Assembly (NCBI GenBank): GCA_002269645.1
Contig: NIVC01001917.1
Location: forward strand, 124,001-188,000
DNA from: Macrostomum lignano
Lineage: Eukaryota
Direction of reading: 5' to 3'
DNA: 64,000 bases
Shown here: in pieces, positions 1,740 to 56,814 of the stretch
How the letters are laid out: each line of letters begins with the position of its first letter
Position numbering within the stretch: position 1 is the stretch's first letter
Notes under the pieces: model-generated
What the model saw: the letters and a program-made list of their open reading frames with translations, nothing else
What the model was told of the DNA's origin: nothing
Databases searched by the model: none
Program-made: the position numbers and the translations under genes

Positions 1740-4813
<3,074 letters not shown>

Positions 4814-4827
4814 CTGTTTTCAAGGGT

Positions 4828-4876
<49 letters not shown>
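4828..4876. repeat. (CA)n microsatellite
   Basis: Read directly. Confidence 0.95.
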
Positions 4877-4877
<1 letters not shown>

Positions 4878-22959: not shown

Positions 22960-23720
22960 TAACAAGAAATCTACACCCCCGTTGGGGAGGCAACAAAAAT
23001 AACAAACATTTTTTAATAAACTACATGTAGGTTTTGACCTTGTACAGTATACTATTTTAGTTTCCCAAGGAAAATGATGTTTAAAGCAAAAAAAGCATCC
23101 GCCCTGTAAGCCAGCTATCTCAGCTCATCTCAGCAACCCCCCTCCATGAGCCTTGACATTTCAGCAACTCCCCCACAAGCCTTGACATCTCAGCAACCCC
23201 CACAAGCCTTGACATTTCAGCAACTCCCCCACAAGCCTTGACATCTCAGCAACCCCCACAAGCCTTGACATCTCAGCAACCCCCTTCCTATGAGACTTGA
23301 CATCTCAGCAACCCCCTTCCTATGAGACTTGACATCTCAGCAACCCCCTTCCTATGAGACTTGACATCTTAGCAATTCAACCATGAAACTTAAAATCTCA
23401 GTAACTCCCCACATGAGCCTTGGCATCTCAGCAATTTCTCATAAGATTTGGCATCGTAGCAATTCCTCATGACCCTTGGACCACAGAATTTAAGCATTTC
23501 ATTTCATTTCATTTCATTCCATGAGCCTTGGAATTTCAGCAATTCCCACCCCCCCCCCCTGGAGTCTTGGCAACTCAGAAATTCCCACCATGAGCCATGA
23601 AATCTTAGCAGTTCCCCCAATGAGCGTTGAGCCACAGAATTCCATCAATTTCCCCCATGAGTCTCGACATCTTAGCACTTCCCTAATGAGTCTTTTATGG
23701 TTGGCATGACAATTCCTTTA
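22960..23720 (+). mobile_element. Dispersed satellite-carrying element (ccttgacatctcagcaattcccc units); further copies at ~39475-39610, 39985-40690, 41690-42090 (+) and 62620-63560 (-)
   Basis: Shared leader gccaacaaa...aataaactacatgtag followed by 25-30-bp units in several copies. Confidence 0.75.
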
Positions 23721-27174: not shown

Positions 27175-28294
27175 ATGAATTCTTCTCAGACTCGTCTCAC
27201 CGACAGTCTGGAGTTGAACGAGAGCGCCGCTCTGACCGGCAGTAACGCTCGCCAGGCCGCGGCAACAACAACAAAAACAACAAAAACAACAACATCCTCA
27301 GTAACGGATATCGGCAGCGTTCTTCGCGGAGACAACGATGCATTCCAGGAGCTCGAGCGACAGCAACTCCTGTCGCCCGGCGCCAGCTTTCGTCTAGAGC
27401 TGACCGAGGACGAACGGGCGCGACTCGCCTGCCGCGGCGCGCCAGCCCTGACGGAGGGGTCGCAATCGCCGCCGCCGGCTGTCCTCGACGACTGTCCGCT
27501 GATGCACGCAGCCGTCGTCACGCGGAACTATCACGTGATCCGTAGACTAATTGAACGGAACGAGCAGTTTCCCAATCAGGTGGATCAGGTAAGGATCGAC
27601 GCAAAGACTTGTGAGGAACGAGGAGTGTCCAATTAACAGGGTCCGAGCGTAATTGGGAGCCCATAAGACACCCATCCAGCACCCATACAATCTCACGCAG
27701 AGCCCACCAGACACCCATCCAGCACCCATACAATCTCCCGCAGACCCCATAAGACACCCATCCAGCACCCATACAATCTCACGCAGACCCCATCAGACAC
27801 CCATCCAGCACCCATACAATCTCACGCAGACCCCATGAGACAGCCATTAAGAACGAACTGTTGAAATACAGGGTACAGACAAAATTCTCACCCCCTGTCA
27901 GCGCACAGAAAGTTACCCTTTCGCGATACCCGCTATGCATGCATTAGCAGCATCCGCTCCACCAATCCAGGCTGGTCAGCTGCCGTTGCACGTGGCCTGC
28001 CGCACCGGAGACCCGGTCTCCTTGCGCCTGCTGGCCCCGGCAACCAGGCCGGCTGGCCGAGCCTTGGCCGACCGTTCTCACGGTCGCACGCCCCTGCACT
28101 GGGCACTGGCGGCCGAGAGTGCCTCCTGTGTAGCTGAGCTGATCTTGGCCTGCTGCCGCAGCTGCTCAACCGGCACTGACGGCCTTGCAGACGAGGCTCG
28201 ACTGCTGCCGCTTGATTTGCCTGATTCGGTGCGTCTAACAAAGTCTTAAGCATTTACTAGATAGTTAGTTCGTTAGTTAGTTAGTTAGTCAGTC

Positions 28295-28389
<95 letters not shown>

Positions 28390-28406
28390 AAGTCAGTCAG
28401 TCAGTC

Positions 28407-28497
<91 letters not shown>

Positions 28498-28498
28498 C

Positions 28499-28531
<33 letters not shown>

Positions 28532-28660
28532 TTTAGAGTTAGTTAGTTAGTTAGTTAGTTATTTAGTTAGTTAGTTAATTAGTAAGTCAGTCAGTCAGTC
28601 AGTTAGTTAGTTAGTTAGTCAGTTAGTTAGTTAGTTAGTTAGTTAGTAAGTCAGTCAGTC

Positions 28661-28699
<39 letters not shown>

Positions 28700-28700
28700 C

Positions 28701-28766
<66 letters not shown>

Positions 28767-29404
28767 CTAGTCAGGTAGTTAGTTAGTTAGTCAGTTAGTT
28801 GTTTAGTTAGTTCACTGCTCTACCCTAAATATTACTGTTGCAAATCAATCATCCGCATTGCAGGAAGGCAAAACGATTCTCAATTATCTGGAGGATGAAA
28901 GCTCGGACGATGGTGGCGAGATAAATCCGGCCGTTCAGTTGCTGGGTCAGCTGGTGAGCCCGGAGACTGGGGCCCTGCTGACCCAGATGCCGGCGCAGCT
29001 GCGCTTGACTCGGCTGGTGTGCACCTACCGGATGCCGCCGCAGCCGCTGTTAGAGGCCGGCCTTGAGTGAGTAGGAAGAAAATGAATGAGTAGCATAAGA
29101 GAAGCTGTCTTTACGAGTTTGAGAATGGAGTGGAGGTAGAATTGGCGTCTCATGGGGTCTGCGTGAGACTGTGTGGGTGCTGGATGGGTGTCTGATGGTG
29201 TCTGCGTGAGACTGTGTGGATGCTGGATGGGTGTCTTATGGAGTCTGCGTGAGACTGTGTGGGTGCTGGATGGGTGTCTGATGGGGTCTGCGTGAGACTG
29301 TGTGGGTGCTGGATGGTTGTCTTATGGGCTCTGCGTGAGACTGTGTGGATGCTGGATGTGTGGTGACTGCGTTTCGCTTTCTGTGCAGAGTGGGGGATGG
29401 GGGG

Positions 29405-29440
<36 letters not shown>

Positions 29441-32400
29441 TTGTACTCGCGCATGTGCATACTCTGGAGCGCGAGCACGCCAGAGGTAGCGGCTGATTGG
29501 TCAGCCTAGTCAGGCTGGAAAATAAACTGGTATTTATTGAGAGAGCTAGGCTTGGCCAGCTCTAAGAGGTTTTTTTCTCTCTGCAAGCCACACAGACTTT
29601 GTTACAGGATGGGTGTCTTATGGAGTCTGCGTGAGACTGTGTGGATGCTGGATGGGTGTCTTATGGAGTCTGCGTGAGACTGTGTGAGTGCTGGACGGGT
29701 GTCTTATCGGGTCTAACAGAGTTATACAACTAACGACACCCGTAGCAACGGCTCGACCTCCCCGGTGTGTCCGTGCGGCCAGCCGGCGGACACGCACGAG
29801 CTGCCAGCCTCTCAGCTGCCCAGCCGGCACGCGTGGAGTCGCGAAGGTGACACAGTCGAGCTGGTGAACAACTGCTTCGGCGAAATGGAATTCTCCGGAT
29901 TGGGTAACACAGCTCAGGTGTGTGGATTGGAATGTGAAAGTTAGGGCGAGAGGTGGAAAATCCAAAGAAAAATATTCTGGTGATTGGGTTGGGGTTGACT
30001 TATAAGAGTGGTGAGGGAAAATGAGGACAGGTGAGGAGTATGAGGACAGGTGAGAGAGTACGAGAACAGGTGAGAGAGTATGAGGACAGGTGAGGAGTAT
30101 GAGGACAGGTGAGAGAGTACGAGAACAGGTGAGAGAGTATGAGGACAGGTGAGAGAGTACGAGAACAGGTGACAGAGTATGATGACAGATAAGCGAGTAT
30201 GAGAACAGGTGAGAGAGTATGAGAACAGGTGAGAGAGTATGAGAACAGGTGAAGAGAGAATGAGAATAGTTGAGAGAGTATGAAAACAGGTGAGAGAGTA
30301 TGAGAACAGGTGAGAGAGTATGAGAACAGGTGAGAGAGTATGAGAACAGGAGAAGAGAGAATGAGAACAGTTGAGAGAGTATGAGAACAGGTGAGAGAGT
30401 ATGAGAACAGGTGAGAGAGTACGAGAACAGGTGACAGATATGAGAACAGGTGAAAGAGTATGAGAACAGGTGAGAGAGTACGAGAACAGGTGACAGACTA
30501 TGAGAACAGGTGAAAGAGTATGAGAACAGGTGAGAGAGTACGAGAACAGGTGACAGACTATGAGAACAGGTGAAAGAGTATGAGAACAGGTGAGAGAGTA
30601 CGAGAACAGGTGACAGACTATGAGAACAGGTGAAAGAGTATGAGAACAGGTGACAGACTATGAGAACAGGTGAAAGAGTATGAGAACAGGTGAGACAGTA
30701 TGATGACAGATGAGAGAGTATGATGACAGATGAGAGAGTATGAGAACAGGTAAGAGAGAATGAGAACAGTTTAAGACAGATGAGGGAAAGGGAGGTAATT
30801 TAATAAAGTCTATTGTTTAATAACTCTATAAAAAGCAAAATGGCAACAAAAAGCAACGTACTTTTTTACAGTACTTCCGAGTCAGCCAGAGCACAGCGGA
30901 CGAAGCCCTGATGTCGGTGCTAACGGGGCACTGGGGCCTCGTCAAACCCTCCCTGGTGATCAGCGTCTATGGCACTGAGATCGACAAGACTGCCTTCAAG
31001 AGCGTCTGGCAGAAGGGCCTGTGGAAGGCGGCCGGTGGATCGGGTATGTGAAATCAAGTTCTTGGCCATTGCATGTCTCAGACTCAAATCAGCTAAGTCT
31101 ACATGTAGCAACTGATCTTGCCCGAAGGCGCCTGGGTCGTCACGGACGGATACGGCGGCCTGTCCGAGCTGTCCGGCCAGGCTGTCCGAGATTATTGCGA
31201 TGCCTACGGCGAAGACTCAATCTTGGCCATCGGCATCAGCCCTTGGGGCCGGGTGGCCAACAGGCCCAGCCTGGCTTCGGACACCTACATGGTGAGAGAT
31301 TGGCACCATAGGAATCGCCTTACTTATTTTCGCAACTGTGAGATTCGGTCCTTGTGAGATTCGGTCCCTGTGAGATTCGGTCTCTGTGAGATTCGGTCCC
31401 TGTGAGATTCGGTCCCTGTGAGATTCGGTCTCTGTGAGATTCGGTCTCTGTGAGATTCGGTCTCTGTGAGATTCGGTCCCTGTGAGATTCGGTCCCTGTG
31501 AGATTCGGTCTCTGTGAGATTCGGTCCCTGTGAGATTCGGTCTCTGTGAGATTCGGTCCCTGTGAGATTCGGTCCCTGTGAGATTCCCCACTGTGAGATT
31601 CACTAAACGATATTCACTCCTGTGTGATTCGTTTATTTTGTTTAAACTGTCTTTTATGGATTCGAGAGGACACTGTGAAACTGTACCCAATGTGACTCGC
31701 CTGAATGGTAAATTGCTAAGATATGCCTGAAAAGAATGAAAATATAATTCTAGCGCTGTTACTTACCATCAGTAGACTATGCATCCACAGGCGGAAAAAT
31801 TTGCAATCTTCAAAAAAAATTACTCGTAGGGCTGCTACCCGGCCAAGTACTTGATGGAGAGCGATGATCAATCCAGCATCAGCCTGGACCACAACCATTC
31901 GCACTTCCTCCTGCCGGACTCCGGTCGCTATGGCGACGCCGCGATCGACGACGCCCGAAGCTTCCGCAGCCGATTCGAACTATTAGTCAAAGATTGGCCC
32001 TCGGTGACCAGCTCAGACAGGATTGGCAGCTCCGTGAATTTGGATGGTCTGTGATTTTAATGGCATTGCTTGAATCTGAAAAACCTGTGAGGGAATTGGG
32101 CAGTTTCCAGGAAAGTACGAGCGAACGATGGAATTGATCATGACAATAGCCTCTATCGCTGTTGATGAGGAGACCACAAGTAAAAAGAACCACTGGTAAA
32201 GAGGGGTGCCGTAGCCCAGTAGTCCAGCCTGGCGCTCTGATGTGCCAGCGGCCCAGGCTCGATTCCAAGTGCAGTCACATTAATTTGGGGCTGAATTGGA
32301 ATCTCGGCTTGGCTCTGCTCGTGCAATTAACGTCATTGAGGCCCAACCCTCAAGGCACTGTGAAATGTACATGCCTAAAGATAAATAAGATAAATAGTTA

Positions 32401-44400: not shown

Positions 44401-47400
44401 CAACAAGGTGGCCTTCGTGAAGCTGTTTGTACAGCAGGGCTTCAGCCTGGAGCAGTTCGTCACCATCCAGCTGCTGGAGGATTTGTACACCGAGGATGTC
44501 ACAACTGGGGTGGGTTTACGAACGCGTGGACCCCTGGAACTGCTCCCAGTATTGCTAGATAATAGCTGTGAACAGACAGTTCAAACTTAGTCAAACAATA
44601 ATAGTCCGATAAGCAGAAACTTCTCGCTCTGTTCTTTTTTGTGCCAGAAGGACAGACTAATGCCTTTCTGACTTGAATACAAAATTTGCAATAAAAGTTG
44701 TTGCAAAAAATTTCAGAGTCAAACAATTGGAATCCTGAGAAACGGACTGCAGGCTGCGGTCGGGAAGACGGTACGAATTTTTTCCTAATCTTGTTTGATA
44801 GTCACTCTATCGGCATGAAATCTGAAGGAAAAGTGCAGTTTCCACTCTAGATTCTAAGTCTACAACTCCATGGTTTAGTCAGCAGTTTCCACTCTAGATT
44901 CTAAGTCTAAAACTCCATGGTTTAGTCAGCAGTTTCCACTCTAGATTCTAAGTCTACAACTCCATGGTTTAGTCAGCAGTTTCCACTCTAGATTCTAAGT
45001 CTAAAACTCCATGGTTTAGTCAGCAGTTTCCGCTCTAGACTCTAAGTCTAAAACTCCATGGTTTAGTCAGCAGTTTCCACTCTAGATTCTAAGTCTAAAA
45101 CTCCATGGTTTAGTCAGCAGTTTCCACTCTAGATTCTAGGTCTAAAACTCCATGGTTTAGTCAGCAATTTCTATTCCAGATTTCTAGATCTAAAAATCTA
45201 CGGTTTCGAAGCTTTTCACTCCAGATTTTGTCACGAACTTCATACTCACCTAGTATTCTCCTGTTATTCCAGGGGGTCGTTAACGTCACCATGGAAGACA
45301 TTGGCAGAGTGCTGCTGCACATGATGGGCTCATTCTACAAGCCATTCTATCTCAGCAAAGAGTTTCAGAGAGACTTTCGAATTGGCGGTGAGTGACAAAT
45401 TAAATTTTCTTTGTTGCTAAGTTAGTAAATATAATTAAAGTCATAAAGGCGGTACAGCATCTAATCGACTTCCATTGCAGATTCGGCCAAAGGCAAACAC
45501 GGTCTTGGCTTTAGTAATGCCGCCTATGTTAAATTCAGCTCGAACGAGATTGACAGAAAAACATCTGGTAGGTTTGAGCGACGGCAAACTACGGATAAAT
45601 GATGACCCACAGTGGAAGGTGCAGATGACCCACAGTGGAAGGTGCAGATGACCCACAGTGGAAGGTGCAGATGACCCACAGTGGAAGGTGCAGATGACCC
45701 ACAGTGGAAGGTGCAGATGACCCACAGTGGAAGGTGCAGATGACCCATAATGGAAGGTGCAGATGGCCCACAGTGGAAGGTGCAGATGACCCACAGTGGA
45801 AGGTGCAGATGACCCACAGTGAAATGTGCAGATGACCCACAGTGAAATGTGCAGATGACCCACAGTGAAATGTGCAGATGATCCACAGTGGAAGCTGCTA
45901 ACCCCGAAATGTCCCCCCCACCTAGACGCGGGCAGCCACATCTCCATGGAGCGACCGGCGCTGGACCTGTTCACCTGGAGCCTGCTCACTCAGCGTACCG
46001 CACTGGCCGAGTTCTTCTGGAGCCTAGAGAAGGAGTGCATTGCCGGGGCGCTGTTTGCGGCCATGCTGCTCAGAGAGTCCAGAGCGTTTAGTGACGATCT
46101 CACAGAGAAAGAGCAGCTGGAGGCGTTGGCCAAGTGAGACCGGATCTCGGATCTACTCTACTCTACTCTACTCTACTCTACTCTACTCCATTCTACTCTA
46201 CTCTACTCTACTCTACTCAACTCTACTCTGCTCTACTCTACTCTACTCTACTCTACTCTACTCTACTCTACTCTACTCTACTCTACTCTACTCTACTCTA
46301 CTCTACTCTACTCTACTCTACTCTACTCTACTCTATTCTACTCTACTCTACTTCATTCTACTCTACTCTACTTTACTCTACTCTACTCTACTCTACTTTA
46401 CTCTACTCTACTCTACTCTACTCTACTCTACTCTACTCTACTCTACTCTACTCTACTCTACTCTACTCTACTCTACTCCATTCTACTCTACTCTACTTTA
46501 CTTTACTCTACTCTCTACTCAGTACTCAACTTCAAATTCCACAGCGCATTCGAGGCCCGAGCCGAAGGCGTCCTCGAGGAGTGCTACCGAGACAACCAGA
46601 GCAACACCCAGGAGAACCTGGTCCGCGAGCTGCCCTTCTACGGCCAGAGCACCTGTTTCGTGCTGGCTGCCGAAGGCGGCTCAATCAAGTTCATCTCCCA
46701 TCGCTGCTGCCAGGAGATGCTGGACATCATCTGGAAAGGCAATTTGTCCACGAAGAAGAACAGCTCGCTTAGGGTGAGGCTGGCAGCTGCAGAGTGGGAT
46801 ATCGCTTCCGACATTGTAACGTTTCAAATTTTCGGTCTTCGGGCACTGCCGCAAATCAAGGCAGCGGTCGATGCAGTCATGCACGCCCCATTCTGCTGAG
46901 CCATGAGCACGCATTTTGAGGGTGCTTGAGTAGCTGAGATGTCAATACTCATAAGGGGATTGCTGAAATGCTGTGGCTCATGGGGGGCAGTATCAAATCG
47001 ACCGTTGAGCTACTCTGAGTCATAAAAAAACTTTTTAACTGCTCAACTAACGCAGTTTTTTTGCGGTCTCGGCTGCGGCCTCGCCTGCCCTCCGCTGCTG
47101 GCGCTGGTGATCAAGTTCAGCTGCGACGAGCTCGATGGCGTCGGCAGCTCGCCCAAACGCCCCTCTGAGACCTCCGGCGGCGGCTCAGCCGGTGCCGCCA
47201 GACGGAAAAGCATCGCCGCCGCCGCAGCGGCCGCCACGGCGACTGGGCGAAAGTCGGGCTTAAAGAAAAACAAAGTAGACCCGGAGACTGGAGACCGGCT
47301 GCCTGACAGGTGATGAGGAGAGTCACGGAGTTGGGATATAGGCACATTGGGATATAGGCACATTGGGATATAGGCACATTGGGATATAGGCACATTGGGA

Positions 47401-50400
47401 TATAGGCACATTGGGATATAGGCACATTGGGATATAGGCACATTGGGATATAGGCACATTGGGATATAGGCACATTGGGATATAGGCACATTGGGATATA
47501 GGCACATTGGGATATAGGCACATTGGGATATAGGCACATTGGGATATAGGCACATTGGGATATAGGCACATTGGGATATAGGCACATTGGGATATAGGCA
47601 CATTGGGATATAGGCACATTGGGATATAGGCACATTGGGATATAGGCACATTGGGATATAGGCACATTGGGATATAGGCACATTGGGATATAGGCACATT
47701 GGGATATAGGCACATTGGGATATAGGCACATTGGGATATAGGCACATTGGGATATAGGCACATTGGGATATAGGCACATTGGGATATAGGCACATTGGGA
47801 TATAGGCACATTGGGATATAGGCACATTGGGATATAGGCACATTGGGATATAGGCACATTGGGATATAGGCACATTGGGATATAGGCACATTGGGATATA
47901 GGCACATTGGGATATAGGCACATTGGGATATAGGCACATTGGGATATAGGCACATTGGGATATAGACACATTGGGATATAGGCACATTGGGATATAGACA
48001 CATTGGGATATAGGCACATTGGTGGGAAGCAGACATATTGGGAAGCAGATACATTGGTGGGAAGCAGACACATTGGGAAGCAGACACATTGGGAAGCAGA
48101 CACATTGGTGGGAAGCAGACACATTGGGAAGCAGACACATTGGGAAGCAGACACACTGGGAAGCAGACACATTGAGCAATGAACAAAGAAATCCCTGATT
48201 TGCCTTCTCTGTCATTATGTCAAAATTTCTAAATCCTACAAACCGACAGAATTATAACTGGATTTGTTTCAACCAAAACCATGATTCGCAGAAGTCGCCG
48301 CTGCCGTTGCCTGTCGCCCCGAGAATTCGCAACCCGCATTCTGGATTTCTACTTCGCTCCGGTGGTTCGATTCATTTACTCTACTGTGAGTAGTGCAGTG
48401 AAGGAATTCTTCTACTGACAAGATTTAAAGAGCGAAATGTTTTGAAATTTTATTACGCTCGTAAAATGAGATTTGACGCTATTTACTATAACAAAAATTG
48501 ATGGGTAATATGTTTCGAAACTTTAAAATATCGAAACGTCATAAACTCGACATTTTTTTATTGTCGACGCTCGTGACGTTTTTGAAGTTTACAGTCTTCG
48601 AGCTTGTGTTGTTTTAAACTTGTGAATCTTCGAGCTTGTGTTGTTTTAAACTTGTGAGTCTTCGAGCTTGTGTTGTTTTAAACTTGTGAATCTTCGAGCT
48701 TGTGTTGTTTTAAACTTGTGAGTCTTCGAGCTTGTGTTGTTTTAAACTTGTGAATCTTCGAGCTTGTGTTGTTTTAAACTTGTGAGTCTTCGAGCTTGTG
48801 TTGTTTTAAACTTGTGAGTCTTCGGGCTTGTGTTGTTTTAAACTTGTGAGTCTTCGGGCTTGTGTTGTTTTAAACTTGTGAGTCTTCGGGGTTGTGTTGT
48901 TTTAAACTTGTGAGTCTTCGAGCTTGTGTTGTTTTAAACTTGTGAGTCTTCGAGCTTGTGTTGTTTTAAACTTGTGAGTCTTCGAGCTTGTGTTGTTTTA
49001 AACTTGTGAGTCTTCGAGCTTGTGTTGTTTTAAACTTGTGAGTCTTCGAGCTTGTGTTGTTTTAAACTTGTGAGTCTTCGAGCTTGTGTTGTTTTAAACT
49101 TGTGAGTCTTCGAGCTTGTGTTGTTTTAAACTTGTGAGTCTTCGAGCTTGTGTTGTTTTAAACTTGTGAGTCTTCGAGCTTGTGGAGTTTCTAGTTTGTG
49201 AAGCTTCGAGCTTGTGATGTTTTGATCTTGTGAAATTTCGAGCTTGTGATGTTTTGATCTTGTGAAATTTCGAGCTTGTGATGTTTTGATCTTGTAAAAT
49301 TTCGAGCTTGTGATGTTTTGATCTTGTGAAGTTTCGAGCTTGTGATGTTTTGATCTTGTAAAATTTTGAGCTTGTGATGTTTTGATCTTGTGAAGTTTCG
49401 AGCTTGTGATGTTTTGATCTTGTGAAGTTTCGAGCTTGTGATGTTTTGATCTTGTAAAGTTTCGAGCTTGTGATGTTTTGATCTTGTGAAATTTTGAGCT
49501 TGTGATGTTTTGGTCTTGTGAAATTTCGAGCTTGTGAAATTTCGAGCTGATGGAGTTTCGAGCTTGTGAAGTTTCGAGCTTGTGAAATTTCGAGCTTGTG
49601 AACTTTCGAGCATTCAAAAATTTTCATAATTTGACGGGCTGCACCCTCTTTAACGCTAGTCTTACACGCACTTCGCACGCAGCTGGCGTACCTGATCTTC
49701 CTGGGAATTTACTCCTACGTCATGCTATTCCTATTCGACAACGGCATGGACAACTGGTCGGCGATCCACCTGCTGCTCCTAGTCTGGGTGGTGTCCCTCG
49801 GCCTTGAGGAGATCCGTCAGGCCGCCCTGTCCGGGACCTCGTTCCGGTCGTACGTGTCGGACATGTGGAACATCATGGACATTATGGCCGTGCTGCTGTT
49901 CCTCATCGGCAGCTGTTTCTTCATAATGCGATCGATGGACAGCGTGGTGCAGCAGCTGTTCGTCACCGGCACTGACGTTGCCGCGTTGAAGAGCGCCAAG
50001 GAGACGCTGATCCGGTTGAGCAGAATCTGCCTGTGCATAGCGCTCTTCATCTTCTATATTCGTATACTGCAGGTGTTCTCCATTCACGTCAGCTTGGGCC
50101 CCAAAGTTGTCATGATTCAAAATATGGTGAGTGCTGCGCTAATGCTGGTTGCTGCAATCTGAACAGATCATAAACAGTTAGATAAGTTGAGTCATAGACT
50201 AATTGAGTCATAGACAAATTGAGTCATAGAAACACTGAATAATAAACAAATTGAGTCATAGACCAATTAGATAATAAATTGAGCCATAGACACATTGAGT
50301 TATAGACAAATTAGTTAATAGATAAATTGAGTCATAGACCCATTGAGTCATAGATAAGTCATAGACATTGAGTCGTAGACAAGTCATAGACACTGAGTCG

Positions 50401-53400
50401 TAGATAAGTCATAGACATTGAGTCGTAGAAAAGTCATCGACATTGAGTCATAGACACATTAGTTAATAAATCAAATGAGTCATAGACAGATTTAGTCAGA
50501 GGTACGTTAGGCATTAGATTAATTTAATCATGGACGTATTGGATCAATTAGGTAATAGATTAGATTAGATAATTGACAAATTACGTCAAAGACACATTAA
50601 GTCATTAAAGCATATGTCATAGACACATTGGTTCACAGAAATATTGGATCATAGAAATACTGAGTCATAGAAAAAAGGTCATAGACACATTAGGTAATAG
50701 ATTAATTTAGTCATAGAAACATTGGGTAATAGATAAATTGAGTCCGACACATGAGTCATAGACACATTGAGTCATAGACACATTGAGTCATAGAAAAATC
50801 AAGTCATAGACACATTGAGTCATAGACACATTGAGTCATAGACACATTGAGTCATAGACACATTGAGTCATAGACACATTGAGTCATAGAAAAATCAAGT
50901 CATAGACACATGAGTCATAGACACATTGAGTCATAGACACATTGAGTCATAGAAAAATCAAGTCATAGACACATTGAGTCATAGACACATTGAGTCATAG
51001 ACACATTGAGTCATAGAAACATCAAGTCATGGACATATTGAGTCATTAAAACTGGGTTATAGACACAAAATAACTCTAAATGAGTACATAAGCTCGTAAG
51101 ATTCCTGAGATTCCTTCGTCCAAATCCCCTGGCGTTGCGCACAGATCGTCAAAGACCTGCTGCCATTTCTGGTCATCTTTCTGCTGTTTATCCTGGCCTA
51201 CGCCATCATGTGGTCCAGCATCCTGTTCCCTAAGAGCAGCCTGTCAATCGCCGAGTCAATGAGCGAACTTATGGCAATAATGAAGACGTCATATTTTCAG
51301 GTGTTCGGCGAACTCAAAGTGGATATGATGTCTGGGGATGGTGAGCCACTTCTAGATTATTAATTTACGAGCGTAATTAGCTGGAAACAAAGCAAACCAA
51401 TTTTATAATCCATTCCGAATTTCCCCTTTCAGTGACTACTTTAAGTAAGTGATTTTCTATATGTAAATAAAAAGCATGAATATTATTTGTACGATTGCCA
51501 CGATAACAAGGATAATCAGCTAGAGACAGGGGCATCACACTGAGATGACAAAGATAATCAGCTAGAGACAGGGGCATCACACTGAGATGACAAAGATAAT
51601 CATGCTAGTGACAGGAGCAGCACACTGAGAAAACAAAGATAATCATGCTAGTGACAGGAGCATCACACTGAGATGACAAAGATAATCATGCTAGTGACAG
51701 GGGCATCACACTGAGATGACAAAGATAATCATGCTAGTGACAGGAGCATCACACTGAGAAAACAAAGATAATCATGCTAGTGACAGGAGCATCACACTGA
51801 GAAAACAATGATAATCATGCTAGTGATAGGGGCATCACACTGAGAAAACAAAGATAATGATGCTAGTGATAGGGGCATCACACTGAGATAACAAAGATAA
51901 TGATGCTAGTGACAGGAGTATCACACTGAGAAAACAAAGATAATCATGCTAGTGACAGGGGCATCACACTGAGAAAACAATGATAATCATGCTAGTGACA
52001 GGGGCATCACACTGAGATAACAAAGAGATAATCACGCTATATGTACTATCACAAAGATAGTACAAATAGTCACCGAATTTATCTTACCCACTCAACATTC
52101 CAAACTGACTGATAACGCCAAATAATTTATTTCTAAGCCGACCAGTGCAAAACCTCAAGCGTGGGCTGTCCAGACATCTGGGGCAAATGGCTGGCACCGA
52201 TTCTGCTAGGAGTTCACATTGTGCTCACCAATGTGCTCCTGCTCAACCTGCTGATCGCAACGTTTTCGTGAGTTTTCTATTGTGGATAGCTTACCCCCCA
52301 TTATGGATAGCCTACCCTCATTGTGGATAGCCTACCCCCGGCCCCATTATGGATAGACTACCCCCCTCCCCATTGTGGATAGCCTACCCCCCATTGTGGA
52401 TAGCCTACCCCCATTGTGGATAGCCTACCCTCATTGTGGATAGCCTAACCTCATTGTGGATAGCCTACCCCCGGCCCCATTATGGATAGCCTACCCCCCA
52501 TTGTGGATAGCTTACCCCCCATTGTGGATAGCCTACCCTCATTGTGGATAGCCTACCCTCATTGTGGATAGCCTACCCCCCATTGTGGATAGCCTACCCC
52601 CATTATTGATAGCCTACCCTCATTGTGGATAGCCTACCCCCCACTGTGGATAGCCTACCCCCATTGTGGATAGCCTACCCCATTGTGGATAGCCGCAGAC
52701 ACTCCTACCCCCCCCCATCCATTCTGGATAACCCCCACTCAATGCCGCAGACACGTTACTAAAGCCACCAACACTCCACCAACACAACCAGGCACACCTA
52801 CGAGGAGATACAGAGCTCCAGCACACAGCACTGGACCCTGCAGCGGTACATGATCATGCGAGAATACACCGAACGCAGTCCGATAGCTCCGCCTCTAATT
52901 ATAGTGTGGCACCTGGTCTTTGTACTGTACGTGCTCGTGCAGCGCTGTCGCGGACATCGGGTATTCGAAAACGGACCATTTAGTAAGTGCTTGGGTCGAG
53001 GTTACTGTTACTAAGGTGACAGTAGCAGCACTGTTTACTACTAATATTCCCAACCTTTTGTGCATCAAAATATCAACCAGTGATACTACGAGTAGACTGC
53101 CAGATATATCACTTTCAAGTAAAGTTGTTGAAAAGCATAACGTCTACTCTTTTTTCAGTAGTTTTCTGCACATTGGCACCTAAAGTTGATGTGGCAGCTA
53201 AAATTTCCTTCCTTCCTCCGGGTTTTCGGCCTCAGGAGCGTACGGGGCATTTAACTCTATGTACACAAGTAAACACAGGACGGACGAAACTCAGCCTAGG
53301 GGGCAGGCCCAATCTACTTGTAGCTCAGCCAATGAGAGAACAGTAAGGATCGAGAGAGGTCAAAGTTAGACGGACGAAGCCCAGCTTAGAGAGGGGGCCC

Positions 53401-56400
53401 AATCTGGCTCAGCCAATCAGAGAACAGTAAGATAGAGGTTAAAGTCAGACTAAGTAGCTTACCCAGACTGAGGGATCCTTGATTCGGAAAATTAAGCTTC
53501 CAATACAGACGCCTAGCTTTTAGACGTCTATGGCCAACAATCTCAATATTCCAGAGCGCAGTTACTCTGGCAACAGGCAGCGAGAGCGTCAGCTGATGCA
53601 GTGGGAGCACATTCGTGCCGTTGAGTTTCTGCGCGGCCAGGACGATCCGAAACGACGGCGCAAGTCGGACACCAGGACCATTGTCCGGGCTGGCGGGGTG
53701 GGCGGCAACGCCACCAACATGAAGAAGGAGCTGGACTCAGTTCAGGAAGGCCTTGGCGACCTGTTTCGCGATTCGATTCGCGAAGTCGAGGTGAATGTGA
53801 AGCGAATCGATAATGTTGAGCGACGGCTTGAGGAGCTGGCGGAGATGGTGGCCAATCTGGCCAAATCTATGGGTGAGAAGCATTACGAGGTGAGTCCGGG
53901 ACTCGAGCCTGTGTTTCTAAGGATTGTGTCAGCTGGTTAGTGTCGGAGCTGTTGTGTCTGTTCTAGTGACTGTTGTGTCTGTTCTAGTGACTGTTGTGTC
54001 TGTTCTAGTGTCTCTCTGTTGTGTCTGTTCTAGTGACTGTTGTGTCTGTTCTAGTGTCTCTCTGTTGTGTCTGTTCTAGTGACTGTTGTGTCTGTTCTAG
54101 TGTCTCTCTGGTGTGTCTGTTCTAGTGACTGTTGTGTCTGTTCTAGTGTCTCTCTGGTGTGTCTGTTCTAGTGACTGTTGTGTCTGATCTAGTGTCTGTT
54201 GTGTCTGTTCTAGTGTCTCTCTGTTGTGTCTGTTCTAGTGACTGTTGTGTCTGATCTAGTCTGTTGTGTCTGTTCTAGTGACTGTTGTGTCTGATCTAGT
54301 CTGTTGTGTCTGTTCTAGTGACTGTTGTGTCTGTTCTAGTGTCTCTCTGTTGTGTCTGTTCTAGTGACTGTTGTGTCTGATCTAGTGACTGGTGTGTCTG
54401 TTCTAGTGTCTCTCTGTTGTGTCTGTTCTAGTGACTGTTGTGTCTGTTCTAGTGACTGTTGTGTCTGTTCTAGTGACTGTTGTGTCTGTTCTAGTGTCTC
54501 TCTGGTGTGTCTGTTCTAGTGACTGTTGTGTCTGTTCTAGTGACTGTTGTGTCTGTTCTAGTGACTGTTGTGTCTGTTCTAGTGTCTCTGTTGTGTCTGT
54601 TCTAGTGACTGTTGTGTCTGTTCTAGTGACTGTTGTGTCTGTTCTAGTGACTGTTGTGTCTGTTCTAGTGACTGTTGTGTCTGTTCTAGTGACTGTTGTG
54701 TCTGTTCTAGTGACTGTTGTGTCTGTTCTAGTGACTGTTGTGTCTGTTCTAGTGACTATTGTGTCTCTTCTAGTGACAGTTGTGTCTGTTCTAGTGTCTG
54801 CTGTGTCTGTTCTAGTGTCTGTTGTGTCTGTTCTAGTGACTGTTGTGTCTGTTCTAGTGTCTGTTGTGTCTGTTCTAGTGACTGTTGTGTCTGTTCTAGT
54901 GACTGTTGTGTCTGATCTAGTGTCTGTTGTGTCTGTTCTAGTGTCTCTCTGGTGTGTCTGTTCTAGTGTCTGTTGTGTCTGTTCTTGTGACTGTTGGGTC
55001 TATTTCAGTATATTTTTTGTCTAATTTCTAGACTTTCTGTTGCTGTGAAGAATCAAAATGCTATTGAATAGCTGCTTGCATTATTCAGTTGGTTACAAAC
55101 TCAGCCTTCGCAAATGCATGCTCACGATCGGATTCTGATCCCTCCCCCCCCAGATGGTGACCATCATCCAGCACCAGTACGAGCAGTCCGAGGAGCGCAC
55201 CCGTCGCCAGGCCATGACGCTGTCCGGAGGCTCTCGCAGCGATCGCCGGACCACATCGCAGCCGGTCGCGGTGGACGACGACTTGAGCGTCCATCTGGGC
55301 AGCGAGGACTCGACCGAGGAGGAGCAGCGGCCGCGAGTTTGGCGCGGCAAACTGCAGCACCACCAGCTGGCCAGGCTAGTGCCGTACCAGCTGGACTCCG
55401 GCTCGGCCAGAGTGGCCGAGATGCCTGAAGTCTGGAGCAGCTCCGACTGGCCGGACAGAGCCGAGGCGGCCGGAGCTTTTAACGGATTCGACTCGAGCAG
55501 CGGGTTCCACAGGGGCTCGCATGCTGGGCGGTAAGACATTTCGTCCCGAGTGGTACAGTGACACTTTGTCCCAGGGAAATCGGACATTTCGTCCCGAGTG
55601 GTACAGTGACACTTTGTCCCAGGGAAATCGGACATTACGTCCCAGACTTACTGGAACATATCTTCCGAGGGGCAATCGGACACTTTCGTCCCAGGGGCAT
55701 TTGAAAATTTTTGGCGAAGACCAAATTTGTGCATAGCGGCGAAATTTAAATGCACAATGGTAGAAAATGTAGTGACTACATTGTGAATGTATTTCACAAT
55801 TATAATAATTGAGAATGAAGTGTCGATGGATTACCATTTGAAGTTATTAAATTTTATAATCAGAAATATCAACACCATCGCTAGCAAAAGAAGATGCAGC
55901 TACTCAGTTTCACTTTTACAGGAATCAGCTAATTTAATATTTTTAACCGACTGTTTCTTTAGTGCTCATTTGTCATTCGTTTTGAATTTAGACGATGTCA
56001 GAGTTAAACAAAATATATCAATAAATATAATATACATGAGCCTCTTTGAGTTAATTAAAACTAAGTCAGTAATTTGAAGCAGAAATTGAAAGCAAATTTC
56101 AACAAGAAGTTGGAACCCCACCCACCGCCGCCGCCACCCAGCTACGTGACTGACGAGGCCGGCCGCCCGATGAACCCCAGCGGCAAGCCGGGGGCACCGG
56201 ACCGCAACCGGCTGCCGCTGTGGGGTCCCAACCACTGCCTCCACTTGGCCGTCACTCGTTGGCGACGAGACGATCGTCAGAACATCGCCAAGAAGGCTGG
56301 ACGGCCGGTGCTGCAGGTTGCGGCGGTGCTGGACCGTCGGGGCGGCATGCAGCTGCCGTGGTATCACGTCAAGCACTGCCTGCCGAGCTGTATCGGTCCA

Positions 56401-56814
56401 GCCTCCGTGTCAGCTTCATCGGCTTCTTCGTCGACAGTTGGCCAGTGCGGCCTGCAGAACCTGCTGCGGGCCTGGCTGCGGGAGCGCATCGAGGCTCTGG
56501 ACGCTGGCAGGCTGGGCGCCAAACGGCTGCACATTCAGCAGGAGGCGGTCACCGCCGCGGCCTGCAGCACAGTGTACACCGGCTTGCTCGACGACAGGGT
56601 GAACGGCGACAACGCCTGGCTGGAGACCGACTTGGTTAATTTGCACGAACACTTCAATTATAATTTTGAAGACGACGTTGTGACCGAGTGCCTGCGCGAG
56701 GGCGGCAGCGGCGAGCGGGTTGCCTGGATCGACGTGGCCAATCGGAGGCTGATGCGACAGTCGCACAACACTCTGCTGCGGCTGGTGGCGCAGCAGCACG
56801 GAGCGTACTTTTGA
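27175..56814 (+). CDS. TRPM: TRPM-family cation channel (~1,900 aa) with N-terminal ankyrin repeats and C-terminal NUDT9H. Exons 27175-27588, 27971-28228, 28864-29066, 29588-29612?, 29720-29917, 30872-31043, 31128-31291, 31830-~32046, ~43845-44509, 44717-44770, 45273-45387, 45926-46133, 46545-46773, 47056-47309, 48292-48385, 49683-50126, 51145-51340, 52138-52267, 52792-52982, 53555-53889, 55154-55530, 56070-56814
   Basis: MHR/SLOG motifs CPCG, HWGLVKPSLVISVYG, GAWVVTDG, LDHNHSHFLL, VPLVLIKGTGGLADLL; MERPALDLFTW; FYFAPVVRF; S2-S3 EEIRQ/WNIMD; SLGPKVVMIQNM; pore QVFGE; S6 NVLLLNLLIATFS; TRP box WTLQRY...EY; WGPNH and DNAWLET. Phases are consistent from 43845 to 56814. The 32046/43845 junction and the 25-nt exon are uncertain. 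Confidence 0.93.
27500..28150 (+). CDS. Ankyrin-repeat exons (about 3 repeats) at the 5' end of the TRPM model
   Basis: PLMHAAVVTRNYHVIRRLI / AGQLPLHVACRTGDPVSLRLL / GRTPLHWALAAESASCVAELI; phase-0 junction CAG|gtaagg...tccag|GCT. Confidence 0.85.
27655..27845 (+). repeat. 42-bp array (agacacccatccagcacccatacaatctcacgcagaccccat); inverted copies at 29145-29360 and 29610-29710
   Basis: Reverse-complement match read directly. Confidence 0.9.
28262..28812. repeat. (GTTA)n / (GTCA)n microsatellite
   Basis: Read directly. Confidence 0.97.
30015..30780. repeat. ~20-bp array (gagaacaggtgagagagtat)n
   Basis: About 35 units read directly. Confidence 0.93.
31340..31600. repeat. 16-bp array (tgtgagattcggtccc)n
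   Basis: Read directly. Confidence 0.93.
32208..32590 (+). mobile_element. tRNA-derived SINE family A, near full length
   Basis: A-box-like TAGCCCAGTAG and B-box-like GGCTCGATTCC; multiple dispersed copies. Confidence 0.75.
32880..35010. repeat. 18-19-bp satellite (ggatgcttgctatctggg[g])n, ~2.1 kb
   Basis: Read directly; source of the 785- and 708-aa artefact ORFs. Confidence 0.97.
35447..35585 (-). mobile_element. Partial SINE family A
   Basis: Near-identical to 41430-41560. Confidence 0.75.
36046..36354 (-). mobile_element. tRNA-derived SINE family B with a MIR/CORE-like central domain
   Basis: Minus strand: TAGCCTAGTGG (A box) ... GGTTCGATTTCC (B box), then gtgtccttgagcaagacacttaactct...ctgtaaaatggg, and a (TAT)n-like tail. 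Confidence 0.75.
37079..38240 (+). CDS. FkbM-family SAM-dependent methyltransferase with N-terminal signal anchor; intronless; one frameshift at ~37592-37595
   Basis: Anchor KLLLLLLGCTAAGLLFAKL; DMISEAIKKNHQ/(W)EKDLV; TFLDAGCNIGVYSLLAA; VVSLDAN; VIKLDIEGGE; VQMEF. ORF 37079 joins ORF 37620 by a +1 shift. Confidence 0.82.
38985..39335. repeat. Short-period (agccatagcc-based) array
   Basis: Read directly. Confidence 0.9.
39655..39975 (+). mobile_element. Dispersed non-autonomous repeat (possibly Helitron/INE-like); copies at ~42740-43100 (+) and 58720-58990 (-)
   Basis: Shared blocks gggtcagaatgtacacacg, gacctttgcaaaaatcatg and cggttcaggcattcagt. The superfamily assignment is inferred. Confidence 0.55.
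40125..40690. repeat. ~27-bp array (aagccttgacgtctcagcaattcccctc)n
   Basis: Expanded module of the dispersed element first seen at 22960. Confidence 0.92.
41325..41689 (-). mobile_element. tRNA-derived SINE family A, near full length, inverted relative to the 32208 copy
   Basis: Minus-strand head gctattgcccagtggtccagc...ggctcgattcc; body matches 32208-32590. Confidence 0.78.
42355..42510. repeat. ~38-bp array x4 (gcacagctccctcaaattagtgctgctcaccccgatta)
   Basis: Read directly. Confidence 0.9.
44835..45175. repeat. 47-bp array (agcagtttccactctagattctaagtctaaaactccatggtttagtc)n
   Basis: About 7 units. Confidence 0.93.
45600..45892. repeat. 23-bp array (gatgacccacagtggaaggtgca)n
   Basis: About 12 units. 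Confidence 0.93.
46150..46520. repeat. (CTCTA)n pentanucleotide repeat
   Basis: Read directly. Confidence 0.96.
47330..48175. repeat. 16-bp array (gggatataggcacatt)n grading into (gggaagcagacacatt)n
   Basis: About 40 near-perfect units plus variants. Confidence 0.97.
48590..49610. repeat. 32-bp array (cttcgagcttgtgttgttttaaacttgtgagt)n with a polarised variant half
   Basis: Read directly. Confidence 0.95.
50185..51055. repeat. 16-bp array (ttgagtcatagacaca)n containing TGAGTCA
   Basis: Read directly; degenerate in the middle. Confidence 0.88.
51505..52030. repeat. 43-bp array (gataatcatgctagtgacaggagcatcacactgagaaaacaaa)n
   Basis: About 12 units. Confidence 0.92.
52280..52735. repeat. 21-22-bp array (cccattgtggatagcctaccc)n
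   Basis: Read directly. Confidence 0.92.
53945..55010. repeat. 21-bp array (ctagtgactgttgtgtctgtt)n
   Basis: About 48 units. Confidence 0.95.
55535..55700. repeat. 48-bp repeat x2-3 starting just after the donor at 55531
   Basis: gacatttcgtcccgagtggtacagtgacactttgtcccagggaaatcg. Confidence 0.85.
56070..56814 (+). CDS. Terminal TRPM exon: NUDT9-homology (ADPR pyrophosphatase-like) domain with a degenerate Nudix box
   Basis: GRPMNPSG...LWGPNH...TRWRRD...LQVAAV...VYTGLLDDRVNGDNAWLETDLVNLHE. Confidence 0.9.

What the first reader, a model, noticed from the sequence alone, without database searches (positions are those of the whole stretch)
27175..56814. Chimeric ankyrin-repeat + TRPM + NUDT9H channel
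Seen: three ankyrin repeats in exons 27175-28228 splice in consistent phase through 28864-29066 and a 25-nt exon into the CPCG...FGEMEF start of the TRPM homology region. The gene then runs through a complete TRPM body and ends in NUDT9H. Established: ankyrin repeats define TRPA/N/V/C channels, while canonical TRPMs lack them. Inference: a domain-shuffled TRPM with a new N-terminal gating or tether module (mechano-, thermo- or electrophile sensing). I cannot exclude that such fusions are already noted in flatworms. Caveat: exon 3 could instead end at TGA 29068-29070, which overlaps the GTGAGT donor, making the ankyrin part a separate gene.
Basis: partly seen in the sequence, partly recalled or inferred. 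Interest (0 to 1): 0.8.

Follow-up and report, generated by a model that had tools for sequence, protein, structure and literature searches.

The report
Flatworm TRPM2-like channel with ankyrin N-terminus
This is one intact 23-exon gene of the flatworm Macrostomum lignano that encodes a TRPM2-type ion channel carrying ankyrin repeats in front of its usual N-terminal domain, an old flatworm-wide variant that sits next to the praziquantel-target channel on the family tree and that I found described in no paper.

Summary
The window is Macrostomum lignano contig NIVC01001917.1:124001-188000. Positions 27175-56814 carry an intact 23-exon gene with GT-AG introns throughout, encoding 1889 aa. The domain order is 3 clear ankyrin repeats plus 1 degenerate one, a Cys motif, SLOG/MHR1-2, MHR3-4, S1-S6, TRP helix, then NUDT9H.

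Exon 3 (ends 29066) splices directly to 29746, in frame. The proposed 25-nt exon is not needed: 66 such bridging mini-exons arise by chance. The model is collinear, with 11 substitutions, with GenBank PAA68780.1. That protein comes from a sister copy whose gene name follows the published RNA-seq-based annotation.

In the paralog Mlig003066, one uninterrupted exon encodes the ankyrin tail, the linker and the TRPM FGEVEF motif. Ank+SLOG channels also occur in Clonorchis, Opisthorchis and Schistosoma, with weaker ankyrin signal in two cestodes. They form a 100%-bootstrap clade beside the TRPM_PZQ clade. None of about 140 other TRPM relatives has the module.

So the fusion is real, ancient and flatworm-specific. 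It is already in databases as an unnamed protein, but I found no paper describing it. The sensory role proposed for the ankyrins is untested.

The parts
27175..27588 (+). Exon 1: start codon, low-complexity N-terminus, ankyrin repeat 1 (aa 107-138, 27493-27588)
   Evidence: In-frame stop 45 nt upstream; donor CAG|gtaagg. Pfam Ank_2/Ank_4 start at aa 109-110. Same start as PAA68780.1.
27971..28228 (+). Exon 2: ankyrin repeats 2 and 3 (aa 140-200) and the start of degenerate repeat 4
   Evidence: Pfam Ank E=1e-08 at aa 175-196. 100% identical to the g2 copy. Aligns with the Ank module of Mlig003066 and of trematode and cestode orthologs.
28864..29066 (+). Exon 3: end of degenerate repeat 4, acidic linker, and 'LRLTRLVCTYRM' (29011-29034). 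Ends in phase 2 at donor GA|GTGAGT, which overlaps TGA 29068-29070.
   Evidence: In the family alignment, 'RLVCTY' lines up with 'WIPxNxKxxxC' of the trematode orthologs. That trematode motif matches a profile of the canonical TRPM pre-SLOG region built from 41 relatives without ankyrins. Exon 3 alone is not significant against that profile.
29746..29917 (+). Exon 4: Cys motif CPCG...H (29768-29797) and FGEMEF (29876-29893), the start of the TRPM homology region
   Evidence: Acceptor ccgtag|C with CTAAC 12 nt upstream. Direct in-frame junction to exon 3. Matches the canonical pre-SLOG profile, E=2e-8. PDB TRPM2/TRPM8 alignments start here.
30872..32046 (+). Exons 5-7 (30872-31043, 31128-31291, 31830-32046): SLOG / MHR1-2
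   Evidence: Pfam LSDAT_euk 2.6e-34. Human TRPM2 6e-56. Splice sites.
43839..44509 (+). Exon 8, after the 11.8-kb intron 7: end of SLOG and MHR2-3
   Evidence: 100% identical to PAA68780.1 residues 534-757.
44717..46773 (+). Exons 9-13 (44717-44770, 45273-45387, 45481-45567, 45926-46133, 46545-46773): MHR3-4 / pre-S1
   Evidence: Pfam PF25508 TRPM2-like domain 2.4e-44. Exons 9 and 11 were found by mapping PAA68780.1 and have AG/GT borders.
47056..52982 (+). Exons 14-20 (47056-47309, 48292-48385, 49683-50126, 51145-51340, 51433-51444, 52138-52267, 52792-52982): S1-S6, pore and TRP helix. Candidate Ca2+-site residues: EEIRQ at 49806-49820, WNIMD at 49866-49880, and the Glu of ...REY in the TRP helix at 52832-52867. 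Pore FGELKVD at 51304-51324.
   Evidence: Ion_trans 2.7e-12. Nematostella TRPM2 6co7 E=2.5e-49, with these motifs aligned. 12-nt microexon.
53555..53889 (+). Exon 21: post-TRP helices and a heptad-rich stretch read as a coiled coil (53719-53871)
   Evidence: The coiled-coil assignment is by eye only.
55154..56814 (+). Exons 22-23 (55154-55530, 56142-56814): linker and NUDT9H domain; stop at 56812-56814
   Evidence: Human NUDT9 1q33 E=6e-21; TRPM2 NUDT9H about 1e-17. The C-terminal 460 aa are identical to PAA62601.1, the only annotated piece at this locus.

Best explanation
Positions 27175-56814 (+) hold one protein-coding gene. It is a copy of Macrostomum lignano Mlig025325 (copy g3), and it encodes a single 1889-aa channel subunit.

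Shown here:
- The domain order is: short ankyrin module (three clear repeats plus one degenerate capping repeat, aa ~105-236), a ~60-aa linker, the TRPM N-terminal Cys motif, SLOG/MHR1-2, MHR3-4, six transmembrane helices with pore, TRP helix, and a C-terminal NUDT9H domain. A stretch between the TRP helix and NUDT9H reads as a coiled coil by eye only.
- Exon 3 splices directly to 29746. The TGA at 29068 is intronic.
- The ankyrin module was gained once, in one TRPM2-like paralog of an early flatworm. It is kept in Macrostomum (two genes), trematodes and cestodes.
- This clade is sister to the clade that holds the praziquantel-target-like channels (TRPM_PZQ).

Inferred, not shown:
- The protein most likely assembles as a tetrameric, Ca2+-dependent, non-selective cation channel of the TRPM2 type. 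The S2/S3/TRP residues that bind Ca2+ in nvTRPM2 are conserved.
- The NUDT9H domain looks like a non-catalytic nucleotide-binding or structural module, because the Nudix box is degenerate.
- The ankyrin module probably hangs off the cytoplasmic MHR1/2 layer, where NUDT9H docks in TRPM2 structures. There it would act as a protein-docking or regulatory surface (partner binding, localisation, or tuning of the MHR1/2-NUDT9H interface) rather than as a mechanical spring.
For: Gene model:
- 23 exons, all introns GT-AG, open frame of 1889 aa.
- Same length as GenBank PAA68780.1 (BOX15_Mlig025325g2), collinear, with only 11 substitutions. The junction ...EAGLDNGSTSPVCPCG... is identical.
- The model includes a 12-nt microexon, which ab initio predictors rarely find.
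- The published Mlig_3_7 annotation is a genome-guided RNA-seq assembly. Transcripts were cut at experimentally mapped trans-splice and poly(A) sites (PMC5730564).

Domains.

The paralog Mlig003066 (locus L001): one exon, 4771-5022, encodes the ankyrin tail, the linker and NNCFGEVEFPGLGNTAQ without interruption.

Same architecture elsewhere:
- Ank_2 above Pfam's cutoff together with LSDAT_euk in Clonorchis KAG5447154, Opisthorchis XP_009171463, Schistosoma mekongi KAK4474030 and Mlig003066.
- In the cestodes the signal is weaker. Mesocestoides has only sub-threshold Pfam ankyrin hits. Anoplocephala has none and is detected only by the family HMM.

Distribution and phylogeny:
- A family HMM sensitive enough to hit generic ankyrin proteins finds the module in no other of about 140 TRPM relatives.
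- A neighbour-joining tree on 951 channel-body columns, with the ankyrin region excluded, gives 100% bootstrap (200 replicates) for the ankyrin clade, the PZQ-like clade and their union.
Against: - No RNA data were examined for this very locus. GenBank annotates only the last three exons here. The full-length transcript model belongs to the ~99.5%-identical g2 copy, and reads cannot be assigned between the copies with these tools.
- That BOX15 GenBank proteins derive from the RNA-seq assembly rests on matching gene names, not on a direct check.
- The acceptor at 29746 has a weak polypyrimidine tract.
- An intron-3-retained or 29720-acceptor isoform giving an ankyrin-only protein cannot be excluded.
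- Exon 3 alone shows no significant similarity to the canonical TRPM N-terminus.
- Channel function, gating ligands and the role of the ankyrins are inference only.
- The Pfam NUDIX model itself does not hit. NUDT9H rests on PDB sequence matches.
Confidence: 0.85

Rival explanations
1. There are two genes. Exons 1-3 would make a 292-aa ankyrin-only protein ending at TGA 29068. The TRPM would be a separate mRNA starting at or after 29720, either trans-spliced to the flatworm spliced leader or driven by a promoter in intron 3.
For: - The TGA overlaps the donor, so intron retention would end the frame at once.
- M. lignano trans-splices 38.8% of genes, and almost 7% of assembled transcripts are multi-gene precursors (PMC5730564).
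- An AATAAA lies about 455 nt downstream of the TGA (read).
- An in-frame Met (FGEMEF) could start a TRPM-only protein.
Against: - The annotated transcript-based protein of the g2 copy reads through the junction. The annotation pipeline cuts at detected trans-splice and poly(A) sites.
- The paralog encodes both sides of the junction in one exon.
- The architecture is kept in trematodes and cestodes.
- The donor GTGAGT is consensus and is identical in g2.
- A TRPM starting at Met339 would lack the conserved Cys motif.
Confidence: 0.06
2. The fused reading frame is real in the family, but this particular copy (g3) is a silent or decaying duplicate in a recently duplicated genome. Only the g2 copy would make the channel.
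For: - Only a 460-aa 3' fragment is annotated at this locus, and only a 1273-aa fragment at g1. Just g2 has a full-length model.
- The assembly is known to be highly redundant (PMC5730564).
- The 3 differences in the ankyrin exons between the copies are all non-synonymous.
Against: - All 23 exons are open and all 22 introns keep GT-AG.
- Exons are ~99.5% identical to g2, while the megablast blocks across the two loci, which are mostly intron and flank, run about 93-98%.
- Fragmentary models are expected when multi-mapping reads are split among near-identical copies.
Confidence: 0.08
3. The fusion is an annotation artefact: read-through or mis-joined models of an ankyrin gene that merely lies next to a TRPM gene.
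For: Genome-guided assemblers do merge neighbouring genes. Several flatworm models are automatic and unreviewed.
Against: - The same order and the same linker motifs recur in independently annotated genomes of at least five genera.
- The junction lies within a single exon in Mlig003066.
- The ankyrin-bearing proteins form a clade on the channel body alone. That is not expected from random neighbour merging.
Confidence: 0.02

Closest known systems
TRPM2 / TRPM2-like channels with NUDT9H (human TRPM2, Nematostella nvTRPM2)
   Same: - SLOG/MHR1-2, MHR3-4, 6TM pore, TRP helix and C-terminal NUDT9H are all present.
- The best transmembrane-domain match is nvTRPM2 6co7 (2.5e-49).
- The S2 E/Q, S3 N/D and TRP-helix E positions are conserved.
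   Different: - About 290 extra N-terminal residues carrying Pfam-detectable ankyrin repeats lie upstream of the Cys motif and SLOG.
- The Nudix box region is degenerate.
- Gating by ADPR and Ca2+ is untested.
Flatworm TRPM_PZQ (praziquantel target, Smp_246790) and the 'nudix subclade' of schistosome TRPMs
   Same: - Same flatworm TRPM2-like radiation. The sister clade has 100% bootstrap.
- Both carry NUDT9H.
- The literature lists two orphan nudix-subclade paralogs beside TRPM_PZQ (PMC11731825). The Schistosoma ankyrin ortholog found here is probably one of them (inference).
   Different: - The TRPM_PZQ-like proteins in my set have no ankyrin module. They are longer, with large inserts.
- This gene is not Ml.TRPM_PZQ. 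The TRP-helix Glu is E1389 here, against E1495 in the published construct (PMC9910428).
- In the tree, Mlig001812, not this gene, groups with the PZQ-like clade.
TRPM_MCLZ (meclonazepam target, Smp_333650)
   Same: It is a flatworm TRPM-like channel for which N-terminal ankyrin repeats have been pointed out in print (PMC10788528, PMC11731825, PMC12861061).
   Different: According to those papers, TRPM_MCLZ lacks MHR1/2-SLOG and any C-terminal enzyme domain, is encoded by 3 exons and has 1380 aa. The present channel has ankyrins in addition to a full SLOG and NUDT9H, and 23 exons.
Ankyrin-bearing TRP families (TRPA, TRPN/NOMPC, TRPV, TRPC)
   Same: Ankyrin repeats lie N-terminal to a 6TM TRP pore.
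   Different: - Those families have no SLOG and no NUDT9H, and their repeats abut the pre-S1 region.
- Here there are only 3-4 repeats, separated from the pore by about 800 aa of melastatin homology region.
- The ankyrin part matches only generic ankyrin proteins such as Ankyrin-1, E~1e-11, so its donor gene is unknown.

Membership tests
TRPM (melastatin) channels | N-terminal SLOG / MHR1-2 domain | tested here: met
   Pfam LSDAT_euk E=2.6e-34, aa 348-589. Human TRPM2 6e-56 over aa 296-749.
TRPM (melastatin) channels | MHR3-4 / TRPM2-like domain before S1 | tested here: met
   Pfam PF25508 E=2.4e-44.
TRPM (melastatin) channels | Six-TM pore domain followed by a TRP helix (W-x-x-Q-R) | tested here: met
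   Ion_trans 2.7e-12. WTLQRY aligns with WKFQRY of nvTRPM2.
TRPM (melastatin) channels | No sequence-detectable N-terminal ankyrin repeat domain (textbook trait; PMC7306681) | tested here: not met
   Ank_2 E=2e-10 to 2.9e-9 at aa 109-196, above Pfam's cutoff. This is a negative, descriptive trait rather than a structural requirement, so I still file the protein as TRPM on phylogeny.
TRPM2-like / NUDT9H-bearing subgroup | C-terminal NUDT9 homology domain | tested here: met
   Human NUDT9 1q33 E=6e-21. TRPM2 and nvTRPM2 C-termini 1e-17 and 6e-16.
TRPM2-like / NUDT9H-bearing subgroup | Intact Nudix box (catalytic REFGEE-type motif), as in NUDT9 and nvTRPM2 | tested here: inconclusive
   In the HMMER alignment the box region aligns poorly (STVGQCGL opposite REFGEEAL), which suggests loss of catalysis. 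No structure-based alignment was made.
TRPM2-like / NUDT9H-bearing subgroup | Ca2+-coordinating residues in S2 (E, Q), S3 (N, D) and the TRP helix (E) | tested here: met
   EEIRQ, WNIMD and ...REY align with the same residues of nvTRPM2. Their identity as the Ca2+ site is from my knowledge of the nvTRPM2 structure.
TRPM2-like / NUDT9H-bearing subgroup | Gating by ADP-ribose plus Ca2+ | not testable with these tools
   Needs electrophysiology.
Flatworm TRPM_PZQ orthologs | Falls inside the TRPM_PZQ clade | tested here: not met
   It sits in the sister (ankyrin) clade, and each clade has 100% bootstrap.
Flatworm ankyrin-SLOG TRPM clade (defined here) | Ankyrin module, then linker with the conserved Cys motifs, then SLOG, in one polypeptide; monophyly on the channel body | tested here: met
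   Family alignment, family HMM, Pfam on orthologs, bootstrap 100%.

The most novel reading that the evidence does not exclude
One TRPM2-like lineage re-acquired an N-terminal ankyrin domain at the base of the flatworms. This created a flatworm-only channel class (ankyrin + SLOG + NUDT9H) in which the ankyrin module controls gating or localisation, for example by binding a partner at the MHR1/2-NUDT9H layer. As the closest relative of the praziquantel target, present in schistosomes, liver flukes and tapeworms and not found among the non-flatworm relatives sampled here, it would be a distinct orphan drug target. It would also be a counter-example to the rule that TRPMs are the ankyrin-free TRP family.
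Probability: 0.4. Interest if true: 0.6.

Novelty: new variant of a known kind. Interest (0 to 1): 0.5.

Why it matters
TRPM is described in the literature as the TRP family without N-terminal ankyrin repeats (PMC7306681). A 2026 survey of TRPM domain gains and losses does not mention flatworms or an N-terminal ankyrin gain (PMC13143021). Here a conserved flatworm clade breaks that rule while keeping the full melastatin and NUDT9H architecture.

The clade is sister to the praziquantel target. Its parasite members are among the orphan TRPM paralogs that the field has named a priority for deorphanisation (PMC11731825).

Macrostomum lignano is transgenic-tractable, so the role of the module can be tested directly. 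There is also a practical point: at this locus the public annotation covers only the last 3 of 23 exons.

Tried and rejected
- **The 25-nt exon.** Enumeration gives 66 chance in-frame bridges, three of them 25 nt long. The transcript-based protein uses none.
- **Acceptor at 29720 used directly.** It shifts the frame into a stop (reasoned).
- **Word-indexed protein searches.**
  - The ankyrin part alone found only generic ankyrin proteins.
  - The SLOG part found only one garbled M. lignano entry.
  - The family alignment was swamped by TRPN1 and generic ankyrin proteins, so it gave no taxonomic distribution.
- **Spliced proteins handed to restricted tools.** I used exon 8 alone instead.
- **dN/dS between this copy and g2.** The copies differ at only about 0.5% of exon positions (3 changes in the ankyrin exons). 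One exon was also mis-registered in my script. The result is uninformative.
- **Profile of the canonical TRPM pre-SLOG region against exon 3 alone.** It scored no better than shuffles. Only exon 4 and the trematode linkers match. So the homology of exon 3's 'VCTYRM' to the canonical strand is only transitive.
- **Identity with the published Ml.TRPM_PZQ.** Rejected on residue numbering and on the tree.
- **Structure prediction.** Not run.
Full report
**Origin of the window.** The last 20,444 bases of the window are identical, base for base, to locus L003. That locus is GenBank NIVC01001917.1:167557-190814 of the Macrostomum lignano Mlig_3_7 assembly. The window is therefore NIVC01001917.1:124001-188000. 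Exons are GC-rich, and nearly every intron holds its own satellite-like tandem array.

**Checking the observation.**
They have AG/GT borders and phases 0, 0 and 2.
- Their translation hits Pfam Ank_2 (E=2e-10), Ank (1e-08), Ank_3 and Ank_4 above the curated cutoffs.
- Three repeats are clear: aa 107-138, 140-174 and 175-200. A fourth, degenerate repeat spans the exon 2/3 border.
- The one wrong detail is the 25-nt exon. The two leftover bases of exon 3 plus the first base after the acceptor ccgtAG|C at 29746 make Asp292, and the frame runs on into NGSTSPVCPCG...FGEMEF.
- If the 29720 acceptor is assumed instead, 66 different in-frame mini-exons can be drawn in intron 3, three of them 25 nt long. 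Such a bridge carries no evidential weight.

**Gene model.**
- I paired donors and acceptors for each open stretch. I then mapped the GenBank protein PAA68780.1 onto the window.
- The result is 23 exons, all 22 introns GT-AG, and an open frame of 1889 aa ending at 56812-56814.
- The model has the same length as PAA68780.1 (BOX15_Mlig025325g2, on another contig). It is collinear with it and differs at 11 residues.
- The last 460 aa are identical to PAA62601.1 (Mlig025325g3, partial). That is the only gene called at this locus within the 10 kb upstream that I could see.
- The model contains a 12-nt microexon (51433-51444) and two small exons (44717-44770, 45481-45567) that I would not have found without the reference protein.
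- Wudarski et al. 2017 describe the Mlig_3_7 annotation as follows. It is a genome-guided RNA-seq assembly (StringTie and TACO). Transcripts were cut at experimentally mapped spliced-leader and poly(A) sites, and ORFs were called by TransDecoder (PMC5730564).
- That the BOX15 proteins come from this annotation is my inference from the matching gene names. The microexon fits a transcript-based origin.

**Domains.**
- Pfam on the first, 1838-aa model gives Ank_2 (aa 109-196), LSDAT_euk/SLOG (2.6e-34), the TRPM2-like MHR3-4 domain (2.4e-44) and Ion_trans (2.7e-12).
- Against solved structures, the region from aa 296 on matches human TRPM2 (6e-56) and TRPM8.
- The transmembrane part matches Nematostella TRPM2 best (2.5e-49). 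EEIRQ in S2, WNIMD in S3 and the TRP helix WTLQRYMIMREY align with the corresponding nvTRPM2 residues.
- The C-terminal 349 aa match human NUDT9 (1q33, 6e-21) and the NUDT9H of TRPM2. The Nudix-box stretch aligns poorly, so catalysis is probably lost.

**Is the ankyrin part really joined to the TRPM?** Four lines of evidence say yes.
1. The full-length annotated protein of the g2 copy reads ...PLLEAGLDNGSTSPVCPCG..., exactly the 29066^29746 junction. The donor context is identical in both copies.
2. An exhaustive HMMER search with exon 8 found a paralog, Mlig003066 (PAA85706.1, 1781 aa). It is 39% identical over aa 107-525 and carries the same ankyrin module in front of SLOG.
3. At the paralog's genomic locus, a single exon (L001:4771-5022, acceptor cccag|, donor |gtgagt) encodes the tail of the ankyrin module, the linker and NNCFGEVEFPGLGNTAQ. 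There the two parts cannot be separate genes.
4. The same order recurs in other flatworms. The order is ankyrin repeats, a linker with a conserved Cys, the C-x-C...H motif, FGE, then SLOG.
   - Clonorchis sinensis KAG5447154, Opisthorchis viverrini XP_009171463 and Schistosoma mekongi KAK4474030 all have Ank_2 above Pfam's cutoff.
   - The cestodes Mesocestoides corti and Anoplocephala perfoliata have a reduced module: two repeats in Mesocestoides and one aligned repeat in Anoplocephala. Mesocestoides shows only sub-threshold Pfam ankyrin hits, and Anoplocephala none.
   - For Clonorchis, the precomputed Pfam list also shows NUDT9_N.

**Distribution and origin.**
- An HMM of the family's ankyrin module is sensitive enough to hit unrelated ankyrin proteins. 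It finds the module only in these flatworm proteins among the ~170 TRPM-related sequences collected.
- I built a neighbour-joining tree on 951 columns of the channel body, with the ankyrin region excluded.
- In that tree all flatworm TRPM2-like proteins fall into one clade with two branches. One branch holds the TRPM_PZQ-like proteins plus Mlig001812. The other holds all the ankyrin-bearing proteins.
- In the ankyrin branch the two Macrostomum genes pair as sisters, and the trematode and cestode proteins group together. Every one of these nodes has 100% support in 200 bootstraps.
- The simplest reading is a single gain of the module in an early flatworm, in one NUDT9H-bearing TRPM paralog, followed by a duplication in the Macrostomum line.
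- The donor of the ankyrin repeats is unknown. The module matches only generic ankyrin proteins.

**The linker.**
- A profile of the canonical pre-SLOG region, built from 41 relatives without ankyrins, matches the window protein from TSPVCPCG onward (E=2e-8).
- In the trematode orthologs the match also covers the upstream W-I-x-x-N-I-K-x-x-x-C strand.
- In the family alignment that strand lines up with 'LRLTRLVCTYRM' of exon 3. Exon 3 alone is no better than shuffled sequence.
- So the idea that exon 3 carries the start of the TRPM Cys-rich N-terminal region (described in PMC13143021) is suggestive only.

**How it most likely works (inference).**
- By homology the protein should form a tetrameric, Ca2+-dependent, non-selective cation channel of the TRPM2 type.
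- Whether ADPR or a related nucleotide gates it cannot be read from sequence.
- In TRPM2 structures the MHR1/2 layer lies at the cytoplasmic bottom and contacts NUDT9H (my knowledge).
- An N-terminal extension of 3-4 ankyrin repeats would project from that layer. I think its most likely role is a docking or regulatory surface.
- A NOMPC-like spring is unlikely with so few repeats. Nothing here speaks for electrophile or temperature sensing.

**Rivals.**
- An ankyrin-only product (intron-3 retention, or the 29720 acceptor) remains possible as a minor isoform. As the sole product it conflicts with the points above.
- This copy could be silent, because only fragments are annotated at g1 and g3. 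Against that, the frame and all splice sites are intact.
- Exons are about 99.5% identical to g2, while the blocks across the two loci, mostly intron and flank, run about 93-98%.

**Comparison with the literature.**
- Himmel et al. [quoted passage not shown]
- The Marchant group notes ankyrin repeats in TRPM_MCLZ. That channel lacks SLOG and any enzyme domain (PMC10788528, PMC11731825, PMC12861061).
- The same review lists two orphan 'nudix subclade' schistosome paralogs without commenting on ankyrins in its text.
- A 2026 survey of TRPM domain gains and losses does not mention flatworms or this gain (PMC13143021).
- Full-text searches for the domain combination found nothing else.
- Public databases do hold the proteins. 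UniProt auto-labels one garbled copy as an ANK_REP_REGION protein.

**Verdict.** The fusion is real, ancient and conserved. It is a new variant of a known kind, of moderate interest.

Noticed in passing
window 27657-27848 versus 29140-29331 and 29607-29714: A 192-nt inverted repeat, 91% complementary, is built from a 43-nt tandem unit. It lies in intron 1 and, reverse-complemented, in intron 3, so it brackets ankyrin exons 2-3. In pre-mRNA the arms could pair and loop out these exons. Flanking inverted repeats of this kind are known to favour back-splicing or exon skipping. Skipping exons 2-3 would break the frame.
   Followed up: partly
window 51433-51444: A 12-nt microexon (TGACTACTTTAA; acceptor ccctttcag|, donor |gtaagt) lies in the pore-loop region between the S5/pore exon and the S6 exon. 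It reproduces 'VTTL' of the GenBank protein of the sister copy.
   Followed up: yes
window 43557-56814 (NIVC01001917.1): At this locus the public annotation calls only exons 21-23 (PAA62601.1, 460 aa, partial). Exons 8-20 have no called gene. I could not see the annotation over exons 1-7. The sister copy g1 is annotated from an internal Met (1273 aa), and only g2 is full length.
   Followed up: partly
window 37061-38237 (+), inside intron 7 (32047-43838): A same-strand ORF has a weak FkbM-type methyltransferase match (Pfam Methyltransf_21, E=2.2e-4, just under the cutoff). It is preceded by an ORF in another frame with a hydrophobic N-terminus. This may be a frameshifted or intron-containing nested gene, or a pseudogene. 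The region is 97.6% conserved in the g2 locus, where no gene is called.
   Followed up: partly
window 28258-28812, 30010-30769, 32913-35008, 47331-48174, 48595-49600, 53949-55001 and others: Almost every intron of the gene carries its own long tandem array: (TAGT)x139, a 20-mer x38, a 19-mer x113, 16-mers x43-51, a 32-mer x31 and a 21-mer x48. Copy numbers differ between this locus and the g2 copy, which accounts for part of the 29.6 versus 35.3 kb gene span.
   Followed up: partly
window about 14789-23400: By collinearity with the g2 locus (L002), the upstream neighbours are a terminal uridylyltransferase-like gene on the minus strand (ending near 15135) and a TRAP-beta gene on the plus strand (about 17.5-22.3 kb). 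The window has a ~2.6-kb insertion (18651-21281) relative to g2. A 438-aa gene without Pfam hits lies downstream in L002, probably near 60-63 kb of the window.
   Followed up: no
window 6001-8000: This stretch has very strong strand asymmetry (GC skew 0.62, AT skew 0.61, GC 57%), which suggests a purine-rich repeat. I did not examine it.
   Followed up: no
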